Virus record (IMG/VR): IMGVR_UViG_3300012988_000001
Span: 124,001 to 188,000 of that record
DNA length: 64,000 nt
Reading direction: 5' to 3' (one strand)
Position numbers and translations under genes: made by a program. Below, piece after piece: positions 52,622-58,071 of this stretch (position 1 is its first letter; each line of letters begins with the position of its first letter). The notes below the pieces were generated by a model that ran no database searches, was not told where the DNA came from, and saw nothing but the letters and a program-made list of their open reading frames with translations.

Positions 52622-53110
52622 TTACTGTAATGCCTCAACGATACGTGCCATTTTTTCTGCACGTGAGGTAGTTTGTCTGTACCATTTTGAATCACGCATT
52701 TCTTTACCAGCAGTTTTGTAATCTTTTCTTCCCATTGCTTCTAGAGCCTTACGGAAGTTAAGTACTGAAGATTTACCCATCTGGAAAACCATCTGCCATA
52801 AAACTTGCTGTAGTGATTCAGGGCCACTCATGCCGTATTGTTCATAAATTGATTTTGCATCATTATATGCATTACGAGCATCTTTTACTAACAAAGCGTC
52901 TGCTTCAGCTTCGGTTAAACCAGCACTGAAATTTTCACCTGAACGTACTAAATGACCATATCCAATTGTTGGAAGCCCTAGACTATCTTTATAGACCCAG
53001 AACTTACCATTTTTGAAATATCCTTTGGAGGCTTGAAACTCCTTTGTACCTTCATGAATTTTTACATCCTTGAAAAAAGTAGCATCAGTAGCGGTTAAAG
53101 TCCAACTCAT
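52622..53110 (-). CDS. T4-type (GH24) lysozyme, probable endolysin
   Basis: HEG...YKDSLGLPTIGYGHL; MVFQMG; DSKWYRQT..RA. Confidence 0.92.
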   Translation of the reverse strand: MSWTLTATDATFFKDVKIHEGTKEFQASKGYFKNGKFWVYKDSLGLPTIGYGHLVRSGENFSAGLTEAEADALLVKDARNAYNDAKSIYEQYGMSGPESLQQVLWQMVFQMGKSSVLNFRKALEAMGRKDYKTAGKEMRDSKWYRQTTSRAEKMARIVEALQ

Positions 53111-53141: not shown

Positions 53142-53147
53142 TATTTA
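53142..53147 (-). promoter_or_regulatory. Late promoter TAAATA
   Basis: 31 nt upstream of ATG 53110. Confidence 0.6.
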
Positions 53148-55814
53148 TTGGCAAGCCTCCATATATCGAGCCATTATCTCCGCACGGTTTGTAGTTTGTC
53201 TGTACCATAATGAATCACGAATACTATGTGCGGCTAATCGATAGTTACCAGCTTGAAGTGCTTTGAACATATTTTTAAACTTAGCTAATGCACCCGGACC
53301 CATTTGATATGCCATTTCTACAAGTACTAATTGACACAAATAAGGTGTATGTAACCCATATTGTGCATATAAACGTTTAGCACCGTCTACACTCCTTTGT
53401 AAATCTTTAATAAGAATTTGTTTAGCTTCATCAGGTGTAATACCATTATTGAATACCCCACTAGAACGTTCAGCCGGGGTTACCAAGTGTCCATAGCCGA
53501 TATCTTGACCTTTCACTGGGTCCGGGAATACCCAGAATTTACCATCACGGAAATGACCACGCTTAGTTTGATATGCAATCGTACCTTCAAAATTAATAGT
53601 ATCGTTAACAAGTTTTTCATCTGTTGCCGCAACTTTCCAACCTACAGCAGTTTTATCAACAGGTCCAATAGTTACTGGAGTACTATCATCAACCACACCC
53701 TGACGTTTCGCACTAGTTTTACGTCTAGGAACATGACGAGAACCACGTTGAGAATATCCAGTACCGATACTCTTAACTCTAGTCATAACAACAAGCTCAT
53801 CACTATTTTCTGAATAATTAGTTGCATCCAATGCCGGGGCATTTTCATTACTAGGCTTACCTTCGATTAATTGTTTATTGGCTGCATCAGCACCTTCACC
53901 AGTAACGGCTGCATAAAACATACCGGGATCAACCGTACCACTAAAGCCAAATAGATTTGCAGAAATCTTACGAATCTCAAATTCAATAACACCTTTACCA
54001 GTACCTACTACGTCACCTTTCTGTACGCGTTGACCATTATTAACACTTACGTTAATATTATAGAAAATAGATTTATATCCACTCATATGAGCAACAATAA
54101 CAGAATCTTTACCATTCACAGTAACTGTACCAAAATCGGGTGCTACAATGTTACCCTTAGTTTGAATTGACCAACCATAACGGTCAGCAGTACTTCCATC
54201 TTGTGTCGGAACACCTTTACCCCAGTAACCAAACTCTCGTATAGTACCAGTACATGGCATTAGCATGTATAGTCCTTCAAGGGTTTGAGTGTAAGTCATG
54301 CTATCTTCAGAGAAAAGCATATCCTGTGTTGTGATTTGAGATACTTCTTGAGTAGTGTTAGTATATTGAACTGCCTCATATTCAGTTTCTTCTGGTAGAA
54401 CCGGAGAAACATCGTTTGCAGGTTGTGCAGGTTGTGCAGGACTAACAGAAGAGTTACCTCCACCATTAACTGGTGCAGCCATAGCATTACTGTGGTTTGA
54501 TGCATCAGAGAACGATTGGTGGAAGTGAATGTGATTAACAAGACCAACAGATGGTGTCTGGAAGTCTGGTGCACCTACTACCGCAGAACTTGCAGTACTT
54601 CCACCTTTAACGTTAAAGCTATTTCCACCACCAGTTAAGTTTACTGAGGTTCCCGAAATATCAACAGAACTACCAGCAGTAATTGCAGTATTTGATCCTG
54701 AAGTCATGTCTATACTTGAACCAGCTTGAGCACGAAGTGACGCACCAGTTACAAGACGCAAATCTGCACCTGCATTAATTACAACCTGACCGCCAATTTT
54801 ACTATCTAATGCACCGACTAAATTCAATTTGGTATTTCCAGCAACACTCCACTGCATATCAGCCCCTGCTTGGAAATTAATATTTCGACCTGCAACAAAG
54901 CTAATATCTTCTCCCATACGGATGTTCATACTTTTGTCACCATGAATCATAATATCACCTTCGGGTGTCATTTCAACACGTGCTGTACCATCTCGGTTGA
55001 TTAAAAACACTGAACCAGTTGCTTCTGATAAAAGTAGTTGTGCACCGCTACGAGTACGTAGTACAATACCTTCGTTCTTACGAGTCCCAACAGACGTGTC
55101 GTTTACCGGGTTATTAACTTGGGTATCCTGATAGCCGTCTGGGTCTTGGTTCCAGTTTCGTTTGTTCATGTCAGCATCAGTATAACCGTCATCAAGAACG
55201 AAGCTATTACCCCGTGGAGTACTCATTCCATATACAGTTGCGGCTACAGTACGAGTACTACTACGGTTTGCTGCACCTTTTTCTTCATCGTATAGAAGGT
55301 TTTGTTTCTTTAGACCTTCAATTGTTGGGACATTAGGGTATTTCTCTTGTAAAGTACTTTGAATAGTGTTACGGTCATAGTCAGTAATCGGTACTGGCAT
55401 ATCATAACCACTATTTGGTAAATTCTCGGTTGCCATACCCGGAACCATTGTATTCATACGTTCATCGTACACACATCCAATCCAAAATGCTTGGAATTGG
55501 TGTCCTTGTGCGAACACTACGATTACTGTCACCCCAACATCTGGTGGAACAGCCCAAAAGCCGTAGCCTTTAGGGAATTGTTGGTATGAATTCGCACCCG
55601 GAACCCCCGGTGTGCGTCCAGCGAATGGTGCTGCATATGAGCACTCAATCCACGAATCTTTTGCATCACGATCACTTTGAGAACCTTGAATCCAAACCTT
55701 TAGCTTTCCACTATCTGTTGGATCTCGGTTATCCATTACCGTTGCTAACTGTGGTAATCTAGGGTCAAATCTAGAAAGTTGGTCTTGTGCATATTGTTTA
55801 CTTGTATCAGCCAC
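53145..55814 (-). CDS. gp5: Central baseplate spike (gp5-like): OB fold, beta-helix, His tip, M23-like domain, lysozyme
   Basis: DPTDSGKLKVWI, GFWAVPPDVG, HIHFH, GQRVQKGDVVG...FEIR...VDP, IGYGHL; likely GTG start at 55814 after AAGGAG/AAGGA. Confidence 0.85.
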   Translation of the reverse strand: MADTSKQYAQDQLSRFDPRLPQLATVMDNRDPTDSGKLKVWIQGSQSDRDAKDSWIECSYAAPFAGRTPGVPGANSYQQFPKGYGFWAVPPDVGVTVIVVFAQGHQFQAFWIGCVYDERMNTMVPGMATENLPNSGYDMPVPITDYDRNTIQSTLQEKYPNVPTIEGLKKQNLLYDEEKGAANRSSTRTVAATVYGMSTPRGNSFVLDDGYTDADMNKRNWNQDPDGYQDTQVNNPVNDTSVGTRKNEGIVLRTRSGAQLLLSEATGSVFLINRDGTARVEMTPEGDIMIHGDKSMNIRMGEDISFVAGRNINFQAGADMQWSVAGNTKLNLVGALDSKIGGQVVINAGADLRLVTGASLRAQAGSSIDMTSGSNTAITAGSSVDISGTSVNLTGGGNSFNVKGGSTASSAVVGAPDFQTPSVGLVNHIHFHQSFSDASNHSNAMAAPVNGGGNSSVSPAQPAQPANDVSPVLPEETEYEAVQYTNTTQEVSQITTQDMLFSEDSMTYTQTLEGLYMLMPCTGTIREFGYWGKGVPTQDGSTADRYGWSIQTKGNIVAPDFGTVTVNGKDSVIVAHMSGYKSIFYNINVSVNNGQRVQKGDVVGTGKGVIEFEIRKISANLFGFSGTVDPGMFYAAVTGEGADAANKQLIEGKPSNENAPALDATNYSENSDELVVMTRVKSIGTGYSQRGSRHVPRRKTSAKRQGVVDDSTPVTIGPVDKTAVGWKVAATDEKLVNDTINFEGTIAYQTKRGHFRDGKFWVFPDPVKGQDIGYGHLVTPAERSSGVFNNGITPDEAKQILIKDLQRSVDGAKRLYAQYGLHTPYLCQLVLVEMAYQMGPGALAKFKNMFKALQAGNYRLAAHSIRDSLWYRQTTNRAEIMARYMEACQ

Positions 55815-58071
55815 GGCTTCCTTCTCCTTCGTCATCATCAGTTAATTGGTCACGTCTACGTAGAGAACGCATTACAATACCACCTGATAATTGTTGTGTA
55901 AATGATCCATTTGGACCAAAGTCACTTACTACTTTATTAACACGATAAATTGTTTGTGAGAATATCGTTGGAGTATCGTAATCCAAGATACCTGTTGTAT
56001 CACTAATCGCAACTACTGGTTTAATATTCAATAATAGATATGCTTCGCTATTAATCCAGTTTGCAACGTGGATATCGGTAATATCTACATCCATATCTTC
56101 ACCAGCTACTGCTTTTTGTAGATAGTTCATGTAAGAAATGTCACTCCACCCCAACCAGAATGGGTCACCTACTACTTTCATGTCTAATTTACTCAAGAAC
56201 GAACGGTTATAGTAGTTGTCACGCATTAAACGACGGTCCATTTCATAGCTACTGCTATTATCATTGACAGAACCGGATTTTGCTGTTTTAATGTTCTGTG
56301 GTTCTGTGGGAATTGCATCAACTGTGCCATTTTTTCCGCCAATCCCTTCAGTGCCAGCATAGGTCATATCATATTCGTTGCGATAATCTTCGATATATGA
56401 TGGATCTGATACCTGATATGTCAATGTGTCCTGTTGTTCGTCTTCTTGACCAACTTTCATCTGTGCTGCGGCTTGGGCGTCACGAATAAAACGTTGTTCT
56501 TCGTCGGTTAAAACGCGACCATTGGCTTGCTCGTCTTGTAAATCCTTCGATTTGCTCCACATGTCTTGCACGTTGGTACGAATTGAGGTATCATATGTCG
56601 TATCTCCAAGCTGAATGTACTCAGCAGCGTGTGTACCTTCGCGGTTTTCAATATCACGTTGTGTATCTGGGTTACGAGTAACCGCAACGTTGAATCCTTG
56701 GTCAAATTTAAGCTCTAAATTAAGAATTTCTTGGTTTAGACCAGTAAATTGATAATCATATCTCTTAATATTAAGTTTAGGTTCTTCATTCCCTTCTACT
56801 TCGTATTTTTCAGCATTTTCGAAGAAATATTCAAAGTTGAACTTTTCATGTTTTAAGTCCTCTTCACTAACAACATCACCAATATTGTACTTAATAATGT
56901 AATAATGGTTTTTGTATGCTAAGGTTGCACGAATTGGGTCATATCCAACATATTTTTGAATAGGGATGATGTTTACAAACTGGCGACGACGATCAGTACT
57001 GGATTGTATTGGAATACAGCAGTCTAAAACGTCATCAAATGCACGTGAAATAGGAACATCTGCACCCCAAGAGAAGTCTTTTGCACCATCAGAACCATTT
57101 ACAGTGTTGCCGACTTCTTTTGATTGTTTCATGTCATAGTTAATAGACATACCACGAAGTTCATCTGGAACATGAATCTCATAATACATACCATTAGCAA
57201 ATTCAGAGTACTTATGCTGCAAATAACCATATTGTTTATCAGCCATTTTATTCAATTTATCTTGAATCTGATCAACAAAATCACCAAAGGTAGTAGAAGT
57301 ACAAGTATATGGTTCTTTAAGCATCCAATCCTTGTTATCAACTAAACCTGCACGAGCACGAGTCATTTGTAAGTCATATGTAATAGTACCGCCACTTTCA
57401 GTTGCACGAGCTTTGATAGTATTGATACGAACCGCCCATTGGCGTTTTAATCCCGGAATACGATTTGGTTTACCAGTTACTGGATGGAAACCGATAAAAT
57501 CCATTTCCATAATTAATGGTAAGTCCATGAACTTGTTATATCCTAGATCATTTGCAAGTACTACAAGATCATTGAATAATGACATACCATTATTTTCAGA
57601 AATAGCCATCACGCAGTTATTAAACGAGAAGTTTGATGTTAAACCCGGTGATGCTGGAGCAGCAGAAGTAATTTGAACACTATCAATACTAAAGCGACCA
57701 GTTACACCACTCTCTGCAATTATATGTCGAGCAACTTCTGTATCTGGATTATCCCAAAATAGATGATATTGTGCAGAACTCAATGCAAATAGGGTAAAGT
57801 GGTAAGTGTAGTTGTCATATTTCAACAACACATTATCATATGGAACTACGAAATCATTTAAGTTAACATCTGAATATACCCCTTCAGCACTGTTCCAGTT
57901 TTTAGGGCGTTCTGCTGTAATTTTAGCTTTATATGGATTGGATGAATTCGGATTCATCCCTGAAATTTTACCATTTGCATCAGCAGTAGTTTCTGCTGGT
58001 TGATTAGTTACCGTTACGGGAATAGAAGTTGTTTGTGTACTCCCAACATCCGTATAATTTAAGTCTGCCAT
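55807..58071 (-). CDS. Baseplate hub protein (gp27-like by position)
   Basis: Lies between gp53-like and gp5-like genes; C-terminal VVGDPFW...YRVNKVVSDF..GSFTQQL hub motif. Confidence 0.65.
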   Translation of the reverse strand: MADLNYTDVGSTQTTSIPVTVTNQPAETTADANGKISGMNPNSSNPYKAKITAERPKNWNSAEGVYSDVNLNDFVVPYDNVLLKYDNYTYHFTLFALSSAQYHLFWDNPDTEVARHIIAESGVTGRFSIDSVQITSAAPASPGLTSNFSFNNCVMAISENNGMSLFNDLVVLANDLGYNKFMDLPLIMEMDFIGFHPVTGKPNRIPGLKRQWAVRINTIKARATESGGTITYDLQMTRARAGLVDNKDWMLKEPYTCTSTTFGDFVDQIQDKLNKMADKQYGYLQHKYSEFANGMYYEIHVPDELRGMSINYDMKQSKEVGNTVNGSDGAKDFSWGADVPISRAFDDVLDCCIPIQSSTDRRRQFVNIIPIQKYVGYDPIRATLAYKNHYYIIKYNIGDVVSEEDLKHEKFNFEYFFENAEKYEVEGNEEPKLNIKRYDYQFTGLNQEILNLELKFDQGFNVAVTRNPDTQRDIENREGTHAAEYIQLGDTTYDTSIRTNVQDMWSKSKDLQDEQANGRVLTDEEQRFIRDAQAAAQMKVGQEDEQQDTLTYQVSDPSYIEDYRNEYDMTYAGTEGIGGKNGTVDAIPTEPQNIKTAKSGSVNDNSSSYEMDRRLMRDNYYNRSFLSKLDMKVVGDPFWLGWSDISYMNYLQKAVAGEDMDVDITDIHVANWINSEAYLLLNIKPVVAISDTTGILDYDTPTIFSQTIYRVNKVVSDFGPNGSFTQQLSGGIVMRSLRRRDQLTDDDEGEGSRG

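What the first reader, a model, noticed from the sequence alone, without database searches (positions are those of the whole stretch)
53920..54263. Catalytically dead M23/LytM domain in the tail spike
Seen: after the HIHFH metal-tip motif (54519-54533) and a Pro/Gln linker comes MPCTGTI...YGWSI...IVAPDFGTV...VAH.SGYKSIFYN..VNNGQRVQKGDVVG...IEFEIR...VDP. This is the M23 scaffold with HxxxD replaced by RYGWS and HxH by VIE. Established: zinc-less LytM domains (EnvC, NlpD) act non-catalytically in amidase activation. Inference: the spike carries a peptidoglycan-binding or host-amidase-activating module ahead of a C-terminal lysozyme, unlike T4 gp5, where lysozyme precedes the beta-helix. The cargo may be cleaved off.
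Basis: partly seen in the sequence, partly recalled or inferred. Interest (0 to 1): 0.6.

Follow-up and report, generated by a model that had tools for sequence, protein, structure and literature searches.

The report
Zinc-less LytM domain in jumbo-phage spike
The central tail spike of this Rak2-like jumbo phage carries, between its needle tip and its lysozyme, a well-conserved copy of a bacterial cell-wall peptidase domain that has lost every catalytic residue. It probably works as a binding or regulatory module; the domain had been noticed before, but nobody had called it inactive.

Summary
Window 53145-55838 (- strand) encodes an 897-aa gp5/VgrG-like central baseplate spike of a 366-kb Rak2-like jumbo myophage. 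Its nearest named relative is Salmonella phage Munch (78% nt identity).

Residues ~524-660 fold as an M23/LytM domain: VIA Z 13.9, and all top Foldseek PDB hits are M23. All five canonical zinc or catalytic positions are substituted:
- HxxxD becomes R553...S557.
- The catalytic His becomes Y593/N594.
- HxH becomes V617-x-E619.

None of 50 orthologues, nor a 38%-identical Vibrio-phage orthologue, has a His or Asp at these positions. The domain is nevertheless under purifying selection (dN/dS about 0.12-0.15), so it is a maintained degenerate LytM domain.

The functional reading is untested. EnvC's specific amidase-activation residues are not conserved, and a complex prediction with AmiA gave no answer. 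I favour a non-catalytic binding or regulatory module that works with the adjacent muramidase.

Novelty is modest. The odd architecture was published in 2013 (RaK2) and a possible central M23 domain in 2017 (CBB). Only the "dead" status is new.

The parts
53145..55838 (-). Whole gene: 897-aa central baseplate spike (gp5/VgrG-like hub subunit and tail lysozyme). The start codon is uncertain by a few codons.
   Evidence: ORF list. phrog_13211 over residues 10-897, E = 0. 78% nt identity to the 'baseplate hub + tail lysozyme' gene of Salmonella phage Munch. Orthologues were found in virions by MS: CBB_240 and phAPEC6 gp241.
55467..55751 (-). N-terminal OB-fold region (residues ~30-124).
   Evidence: Pfam PF04717 Phage_base_V at residues 90-124, 24.8 bits against a cut-off of 23.8. 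Strands appear in the AF2 model.
54579..55061 (-). Beta-helical shaft (residues ~260-420).
   Evidence: DUF2345 match at 351-393, 27.5 bits, below the 30.7 cut-off. This is the best-predicted N-terminal part of the monomer model, pLDDT 70-89. The CBB orthologue's best HHpred hit was a T6SS VgrG spike.
54474..54578 (-). Apex region (residues 421-455), containing HIHFH (residues 436-440, 54519-54533) and H449.
   Evidence: H436, H438, H440 and H449 are invariant in 50 orthologues. HxH is kept in the Vibrio-phage orthologue. The P2 gpV apex uses an HxH histidine cage around Fe (bioRxiv 10.1101/2023.02.25.529910).
54270..54473 (-). Linker 1 (residues 456-523): Gly/Ser, then Pro/Gln/Ala-rich, with conserved islands. 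The NGGGNS motif is at residues 458-463 (54450-54467).
   Evidence: pLDDT below 50. Lower conservation, with indels at 501-520. The TP901-1 Tal processing motif begins with the same six residues (PMC11409707).
53859..54269 (-). Degenerate LytM/M23 domain (residues 524-660). Substituted catalytic positions are R553 (54180-54182), S557 (54168-54170), Y593/N594 (54057-54062), V617 (53988-53990) and E619 (53982-53984).
53640..53858 (-). Linker 2 (residues 661-733), with a conserved strand-like segment and a basic motif (about residues 681-707), then a variable Ser/Asn/Thr-rich stretch.
   Evidence: pLDDT below 50 for 666-723. Alignment.
53148..53639 (-). C-terminal GH24 (T4-type) lysozyme domain (residues 734-897). 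E751 and D773 are invariant. The Thr26-equivalent position 779 is Asp here.
   Evidence: PDB sequence hits to T4 lysozyme and gp5. PHROG endolysin families. VIA Z 14.6. Column counts.
52622..53110 (-). Adjacent stand-alone 162-aa GH24 lysozyme, a paralogue of the spike's C-terminal domain (42% identity). It is a possible partner of the dLytM domain.
   Evidence: Pfam PF00959 E 2.3e-9. BLASTP against the spike, 1e-43. The same gene order occurs in Munch and CBB.

Best explanation
Residues ~524-660 of the central spike are a degenerate, zinc-less LytM (M23-fold) domain that no longer cuts peptidoglycan but is kept by selection as a non-catalytic module.

It sits on a flexible C-terminal 'cargo arm' that leaves the needle at its His-rich apex: linker, dLytM, linker, GH24 muramidase. 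When the tail contracts, three such arms enter the periplasm with the spike.

I propose that the dLytM groove, whose N-terminal hairpin wall is the best-conserved part, binds a ligand there. The ligand would be peptidoglycan stem peptides and/or a glycan-cleaving domain, either the spike's own GH24 lysozyme or the stand-alone paralogue encoded next door. Binding would position or stimulate local muramidase action. This resembles a cell-wall-binding domain, or Caulobacter DipM, whose dLytM groove stimulates lytic transglycosylases.

Shown: the fold, the loss of all canonical catalytic residues across the family, purifying selection, the domain order, and virion association of orthologues (from the literature).

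Inferred: absence of zinc and of activity, the ligand, the cooperation with the lysozyme, and where the arm sits in the virion.
For: - Fold: Foldseek top 50 are all M23/LytM. VIA Z is 13.9 (StM23), 13.2-12.8 (EnvC), 13.1 (DipM) and 12.2 (SpoIIQ), and an independent full-length model reproduces it.
- Dead site: R553, S557, Y593/N594, V617 and E619 occupy the zinc and catalytic positions. In 50 orthologues these columns hold no His or Asp ligand set, and the same is true of a 38%-identical Vibrio-phage orthologue.
- Maintained: dN/dS is 0.12-0.15, like the lysozyme and beta-helix. There are 34 invariant residues, and block 521-540 is the most conserved of the C-terminal half.
- Context: an intact GH24 domain with E751/D773 lies 75 residues downstream, and a paralogous lysozyme gene follows immediately.
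- Precedent: degenerate LytM grooves dock and stimulate autolysins, including glycan-cleaving SdpA (PMC10336132; review PMC9662197).
- M23 domains on phage hubs and tips are common, for example in A-1(L) gp15, phi29 gp13 and Tal.
Against: - No binding or activity data exist for any family member.
- I could not inspect model coordinates, so the statement that conserved residues line the groove rests on alignment to EnvC/MepM, not on a surface map.
- The position equivalent to EnvC Y401 (residue 619) is variable, so part of the groove is not constrained.
- R553 is invariant among the 50 but is Asn in the Vibrio-phage orthologue.
- The domain could equally serve inside the virion, in docking or stowage.
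- The stand-alone lysozyme was not detected in virions of related phages.
- dS is near saturation, so the dN/dS values are approximate.
Confidence: 0.45

Rival explanations
1. Virion-internal structural or stowage role. The dLytM domain is a protein-protein adaptor, as in SpoIIQ or Csd2. It docks the cargo arm back onto the beta-helix, hub or baseplate, keeps the needle tip free, and holds the lysozyme silent until firing. It has no role on peptidoglycan.
For: Degenerate LytM domains act as protein hubs: SpoIIQ-SpoIIIAH and Csd1-Csd2 are among the structural hits (review). Linker 1 is long enough to fold back (68 residues) and contains conserved islands rather than pure low complexity. In T4 gp5 the lysozyme also rides on the side of the shaft (established knowledge).
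Against: No structure of a Rak2-like baseplate resolves the spike; the phiKp24 paper does not describe it. Both linkers are predicted to be disordered in the monomer. Nothing identifies a partner.
Confidence: 0.25
2. One reading: the domain is a viral LytM factor that binds host amidases (AmiA/B/C) in the periplasm and relieves their auto-inhibition, as EnvC and NlpD do. Host enzymes then help open the sacculus.
For: The domain has the same fold and a similarly degenerate active site as EnvC; the EnvC LytM domain and the AmiB-EnvC complex are among the hits. In most orthologues the Asp position is hydrophobic (I/V), as is V324 of EnvC. The spike does deliver the domain to the periplasm.
Against: Of the EnvC residues required for activation, K321 maps to Y/N554, Y401 maps to a variable column, and Y350 lies in a loop that is deleted in the phage domain. 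Only R405 maps to a conserved residue (R623), and that residue is conserved in all M23 domains. AmiB and AmiC act at the septum, whereas a phage can land anywhere (established knowledge). The spike already carries its own muramidase.
Confidence: 0.1
3. The domain is still a peptidase that uses non-canonical residues, or another metal or ligand set.
For: Some residues near the site are conserved: H584 (49/50), E621 and D637 are invariant.
Against: These three residues are the generic structural residues of all M23 domains, including the inactive EnvC. No His/Asp triad remains at the metal site in any orthologue. No M23 enzyme that lacks all five residues is known to be active (review PMC9662197).
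Confidence: 0.05
4. It is not an M23 domain at all, but another barrel-sandwich or 'duplicated hybrid' fold such as EIIA-Glc or a biotinyl/lipoyl-like domain, or a chance match.
For: The Pfam score is marginally below the gathering cut-off. EIIA-Glc structures score Z 9.6-9.7. hhalign probability against three E. coli LytM domains is only 79%.
Against: All M23 structures rank above EIIA (Z up to 13.9). The sequence-level hits are specifically to M23. Characteristic M23 motifs are present: PxxG...FG at the N-terminus, the GxxVxKGxxIG strand, FEIR, and VDP at the C-terminus.
Confidence: 0.02

Closest known systems
Degenerate LytM factors of bacteria (E. coli EnvC and NlpD, Caulobacter DipM, B. 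subtilis SpoIIQ, H. pylori Csd2)
   Same: M23 fold with an incomplete or absent zinc-ligand set, retained under selection. Structural similarity is Z 12-13. The C-terminal FEIR and VDP/VNP motifs are kept.
   Different: This domain is encoded by a phage and embedded in a virion spike, not in a periplasmic or lipoprotein regulator. It has no coiled-coil or LysM partner domains. EnvC's specific activation residues are not conserved, and the 'gyG' loop is about 5 residues shorter. No target is known.
Orthologous spike proteins of Rak2-like jumbo phages (RaK2 gp078, CBB_240, GAP32, 121Q, phAPEC6 gp241, Munch gp266)
   Same: Same protein family (phrog_13211), the same six-part architecture, 51-99% identity, and the same neighbouring genes.
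   Different: Nothing structural differs. This is a new sequence, 78% nt identical to Munch. The literature noted the odd domain order (PMC3622015) and a possible central M23 domain (PMC5259590), but not that it lacks all catalytic residues.
T4 gp5 tail lysozyme / T6SS 'evolved' VgrG spikes
   Same: An N-terminal OB fold, a trimeric beta-helical needle, and a GH24 lysozyme carried into the periplasm. As in evolved VgrGs, the cargo is fused C-terminal to the needle.
   Different: In T4 the lysozyme lies between the OB fold and the beta-helix, and a separate PAAR protein caps the tip. Here the needle ends in a built-in HxHxH apex like P2 gpV, and the chain then continues for about 450 residues carrying two domains.
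Active virion-borne M23 peptidases (phi29 gp13, lactococcal Tal2009/TP901-1 Tal, cyanophage A-1(L) hub gp15)
   Same: An M23-fold domain on the tail tip or hub, combined with a glycosidase domain. Tal also places a Gly-rich processing motif before the catalytic domains.
   Different: Those domains keep HxxxD and HxH and have measured lytic activity. This one has lost all five residues.

Membership tests
Peptidase M23 / LytM fold (Pfam PF01551) | Sequence match to the family profile at the curated cut-off | tested here: inconclusive
   28.5 bits for the domain alone and 22.9 within the full protein, against a cut-off of 28.7. The six-frame scan gives 28.2, counted as reaching 28.7 with neighbouring matches. 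5 of 49 orthologues carry a precomputed PF01551 hit.
Peptidase M23 / LytM fold (Pfam PF01551) | M23 beta-sheet fold | tested here: met
   On a predicted structure only. VIA Z 13.9, rmsd 2.6 over 116 residues to StM23. The top 24 rows are all M23. Foldseek probability is 1.00. Reproduced in a second model.
Peptidase M23 / LytM fold (Pfam PF01551) | HxxxD zinc-binding motif | tested here: not met
   R553-Y-G-W-S557. Arg is invariant, and the Asp column is I/S/V/T/L in 50 orthologues.
Peptidase M23 / LytM fold (Pfam PF01551) | HxH motif and the third catalytic His | tested here: not met
   V617-I-E619 aligns to H-L-H of MepM. Y593/N594 aligns to the catalytic His of LasA, MepM and NlpD. These columns hold no His in any orthologue.
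Peptidase M23 / LytM fold (Pfam PF01551) | Zinc content and endopeptidase activity | not testable with these tools
   Needs purified protein.
Degenerate LytM domains / LytM factors | M23 fold with a defective metal site, retained under purifying selection | tested here: met
   Fold. Site. dN/dS 0.12-0.15 against Munch, L001 and L002.
Degenerate LytM domains / LytM factors | EnvC-type amidase-activation residues (K321, V324, Y350, V353, Y401, R405) | tested here: not met
   Only R405 maps to a conserved residue, R623, which is generic to M23. K321 maps to Y/N554, Y401 to the variable column 619, and Y350 to a deleted loop. The mapping is by sequence alignment.
Degenerate LytM domains / LytM factors | Binds and stimulates a peptidoglycan hydrolase through the groove | not testable with these tools
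   The one complex prediction allowed (with AmiA) gave no verdict. This needs biochemistry.
gp5 / VgrG / gpV-type central spike | N-terminal OB fold plus beta-helical needle | tested here: met
   PF04717 24.8 bits, above 23.8. [quoted passage not shown] The trimeric helix itself was not modelled.
gp5 / VgrG / gpV-type central spike | HxH histidine cage binding a metal at the apex | tested here: inconclusive
   The motif is present and invariant: H436, H438, H440 and H449. Metal binding and the apex fold were not tested, and the apex has low pLDDT in the monomer.
GH24 T4-type lysozyme | Fold and the catalytic Glu/Asp (T4L E11, D20) | tested here: met
   VIA Z 14.6. T4L and gp5 hits at 1e-8 to 1e-9. 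E751 and D773 are invariant and spaced as in T4L. The T26 equivalent is Asp in the window and in 16 of the 50 aligned sequences (the window included), and Thr in the other 34. Pfam PF00959 was not reported for the window protein itself.

The most novel reading that the evidence does not exclude
The spike injects a viral 'LytM factor'. Once in the periplasm, the zinc-less domain hijacks host autolysins (amidases or lytic transglycosylases), or switches on the phage's own muramidase, through its degenerate groove. It may do so after being released from the needle at the Gly-rich site. This would be the first phage-encoded activator of peptidoglycan hydrolases used for entry.
Probability: 0.12. 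Interest if true: 0.75.

Novelty: new member of a known kind. Interest (0 to 1): 0.35.

Why it matters
If the domain is a binding or activating module, it would extend the LytM-factor principle from bacterial cell division to phage entry. In that principle, dead peptidases act as regulators of cell-wall hydrolases. It would also explain why a whole clade of 350-kb phages (on Salmonella, E. coli, Klebsiella, Erwinia, Yersinia, Cronobacter, Xanthomonas and Vibrio) keeps this domain.

It also corrects annotation. These proteins should not be listed as virion-borne M23 peptidases when enzybiotic candidates are being sought.

As it stands, this is an incremental refinement of a published domain assignment.

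Tried and rejected
- **Complex prediction.** dLytM (alignment A2) with E. coli AmiA residues 35-289 gave 'no answer', score 0.00, and the controls were not run. It counts neither for nor against binding.
- **hhalign.** The phage-domain profile against MepM/NlpD/EnvC gave only 79% probability over 47 columns. It was useful for the HxH and catalytic-His columns. It did not cover the HxxxD region, where MAFFT offered two registers. I chose the one supported by the Pfam coordinates, the LasA alignment and the model's strands.
- **Full-length AF2 monomer.** pTM was 0.29. It was good for domain boundaries only and gave no information on how the arm packs.
- **Literature.** The phiKp24 cryo-EM paper does not resolve the spike. 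The phAPEC6 paper has no held supplements, and the CBB supplements give no peptide positions. So whether the C-terminal arm stays on the virion remains open.
- **Internal translation start at M525/M527.** A GAAGG(A/T) sequence precedes it and is conserved in 12 orthologues. However, it encodes the conserved Glu-Gly, lies 12 nt from the invariant ATG, and is absent from the Vibrio phage. I judged this unconvincing.
- **Large representative-protein search.** Not run. The claim does not rest on absence of relatives, and a length-agnostic tblastn of the domain against 50,697 phage records found it only in this architecture (73 records).
- Not used.
Full report
**What is there**

The finding lies in one long ORF on the minus strand, 53145-55838, encoding 897 aa. 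HIHFH is residues 436-440, exactly 54519-54533.

[quoted passage not shown] Its neighbours form a baseplate module:
- an upstream 754-aa virion protein;
- a downstream 162-aa GH24 lysozyme;
- a gp25-like wedge protein;
- an 1154-aa wedge protein.

The window is bases 124001-188000 of a 366,160-bp virus record with direct terminal repeats. The gene is 78% identical in DNA to Salmonella phages Munch, 7t3, SE_PL and PHA46. The domain alone is found by tblastn in 73 phage records, all about 320-380-kb Rak2-like jumbo myophages apart from one 24.6-kb Klebsiella phage record, and always under this gene.

**Is it an M23 domain?**

- Pfam Peptidase_M23 scores 28.5 bits (E 1.7e-6) on the domain alone, a hair below the 28.7 cut-off. 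A family profile finds the M23 proteases LasA and pseudoalterin in the PDB.
- An AlphaFold2 model of residues 500-665, built with 47 family sequences (pLDDT 78), matches only M23/LytM structures in the top 50 Foldseek hits.
- In an exhaustive VIA search the first 24 rows are all M23 family. Z is 13.9 to StM23, 13.2 and 12.8 to EnvC, 13.1 to DipM and 12.2 to SpoIIQ. EIIA-Glc, the nearest other fold, scores 9.6-9.7.
- An independent full-length model gives the same result (Z 14.0).

The fold assignment is therefore solid for a prediction.

**Is it catalytically dead?**

I aligned the domain to E. coli MepM (active), NlpD and EnvC (degenerate), taken from the K-12 genome.
- The C-terminal H-L-H of MepM aligns to V617-I-E619.
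- The catalytic His of the 'yaH' strand aligns to Y593 or N594, depending on a one-residue gap. The LasA alignment places it at 594.
- The HxGxD motif corresponds to R553-Y-G-W-S557. This register agrees with the Pfam coordinates, the LasA alignment and the model's strands.

In 50 family members at 51-99% identity, the column compositions are as follows:

| Position | Canonical residue | Residues seen in 50 orthologues |
|---|---|---|
| 553 | His of HxxxD | always Arg |
| 557 | Asp of HxxxD | I/S/V/T/L |
| 594 | catalytic His | D/G/N/E |
| 593 | (alternative register) | always Tyr |
| 617 | first His of HxH | not tabulated; Val in the window, no His in any aligned sequence |
| 619 | second His of HxH | variable (E/T/Q/V/S/N/I/D) |

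The 38%-identical orthologue of Vibrio phage 2.275.O also has none of the five residues. The loss is therefore old and general in this lineage. That the domain binds no zinc and has no activity is an inference from these substitutions. It was not measured.

**Is it decaying or maintained?**

It is maintained. The domain has 34 invariant residues, and block 521-540 is the most conserved of the C-terminal half. Nei-Gojobori dN/dS against three relatives is 0.12-0.15. This is comparable with the lysozyme (0.07-0.44) and the beta-helix (0.13-0.29), and lower than linker 2 (0.22-0.47). dS is close to saturation, so these values are approximate.

**Architecture**

| Residues | Part | Evidence |
|---|---|---|
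| ~30-124 | OB fold | PF04717 |
| 125-259 | poorly predicted region | |
| ~260-420 | beta-helical shaft | pLDDT 70-89 in the monomer model |
| 421-455 | apex | invariant H436, H438, H440, H449 |
| 456-523 | linker 1 | pLDDT <50 |
| 524-660 | dLytM | see above |
| 661-733 | linker 2 | pLDDT <50 |
| 734-897 | GH24 lysozyme | Z 14.6 |

The HxH motif is the signature of the iron-binding histidine cage at the tip of P2 gpV. In the lysozyme, E751 and D773 are invariant and spaced as E11 and D20 of T4 lysozyme.

It is also already published. The RaK2 paper called gp078 'very unusual' in domain composition (PMC3622015). [quoted passage not shown] Neither paper says the domain lacks its catalytic residues. 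Orthologues are virion proteins by mass spectrometry: CBB_240 and phAPEC6 gp241.

**How it may work**

Degenerate LytM domains are known as regulators and adaptors:
- EnvC and NlpD activate amidases.
- DipM docks and stimulates both an amidase and the lytic transglycosylase SdpA through the groove around the dead site.
- SpoIIQ and Csd2 are protein-protein adaptors (PMC9662197; PMC10336132).

Active M23 domains are common on phage tips and hubs, for example phi29 gp13, lactococcal Tal and the A-1(L) hub.

Only R405 maps to a conserved residue (R623), and that residue is generic to M23. K321, Y401 and Y350 fall on Y/N554, a variable column and a deleted loop. The single complex prediction allowed, with AmiA, returned no verdict.

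I therefore rank the explanations as follows:
- **A non-catalytic ligand-binding or regulatory module cooperating with the adjacent muramidase(s): 0.45.** The ligand would be peptidoglycan or a lysozyme domain.
- **A purely virion-internal docking or stowage role: 0.25.**
- **Host-amidase activation: 0.10.**
- **Residual non-canonical peptidase activity: 0.05.**
- **Not an M23 domain at all: 0.02.**

None of these is tested.

**Processing**

Right after the apex the window has NGGGNS (residues 458-463); the family consensus is GGG followed by Ser/Asn. The TP901-1 Tal protein is cleaved in the motif NGGGNSGGGD, just before its lytic domains, which produces two virion populations (PMC11409707). 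The resemblance is short and of low complexity.

**Verdict**

This is a new member of the degenerate-LytM kind, in a phage spike family whose architecture and M23-like domain were already described. Interest is moderate.

Noticed in passing
window 52622-53110 (-): A stand-alone 162-aa GH24 lysozyme lies directly downstream of the spike gene. It is 42% identical to the spike's C-terminal domain (a tandem paralogue) and has the canonical Glu/Asp/Thr triad. The literature says this paralogue has not been confirmed as a structural (virion) protein in Rak2-like phages.
   Followed up: partly
window 53502-53504 (-), residue D779 of the spike: The position equivalent to T4 lysozyme Thr26 is Asp in this phage. 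Of the 50 aligned sequences, 16 (this one included) have Asp and 34 have Thr. Pfam PF00959 also did not report the window's spike protein, although it hits the paralogue and most orthologues. The spike lysozyme of this clade may have altered chemistry.
   Followed up: partly
window 54450-54467 (-), residues 458-463: NGGGNS lies immediately after the His-rich apex. It is identical to the first six residues of the proteolytic processing motif of lactococcal phage TP901-1 Tal (NGGGNSGGGD). The Gly run is conserved across the family.
   Followed up: partly
window ~53718-53798 (-), residues ~681-707: There is a conserved island inside linker 2: a strand-like segment followed by a basic motif (QRGSRHVPRR-type). 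It is nearly invariant across genera and is followed by a variable Ser/Asn/Thr-rich stretch. Its role is unknown; it could be a docking strand or a processing site.
   Followed up: no
window 54258-54281 (-): A GAAGG(A/T) Shine-Dalgarno-like sequence is conserved upstream of the invariant Met527 at the start of the dLytM domain, in 12 orthologues. It also encodes the conserved Glu-Gly and is absent from the Vibrio-phage orthologue, so an internal start is not convincing.
   Followed up: yes
window 55807-55838 (-): The spike ORF's first ATG overlaps the end of the upstream 754-aa virion-protein gene by 32 nt. Munch annotates its start 8 codons further in. The true start codon is uncertain by a few codons.
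   Followed up: no
window 54294-54410 (-), residues 477-515: Linker 1 is not pure low complexity. It has conserved islands (PANDV, and a VQ-INST-EV-QV-TQDL-type segment with invariant D506). This suggests that part of the 'linker' packs against something in the assembled trimer.
   Followed up: no
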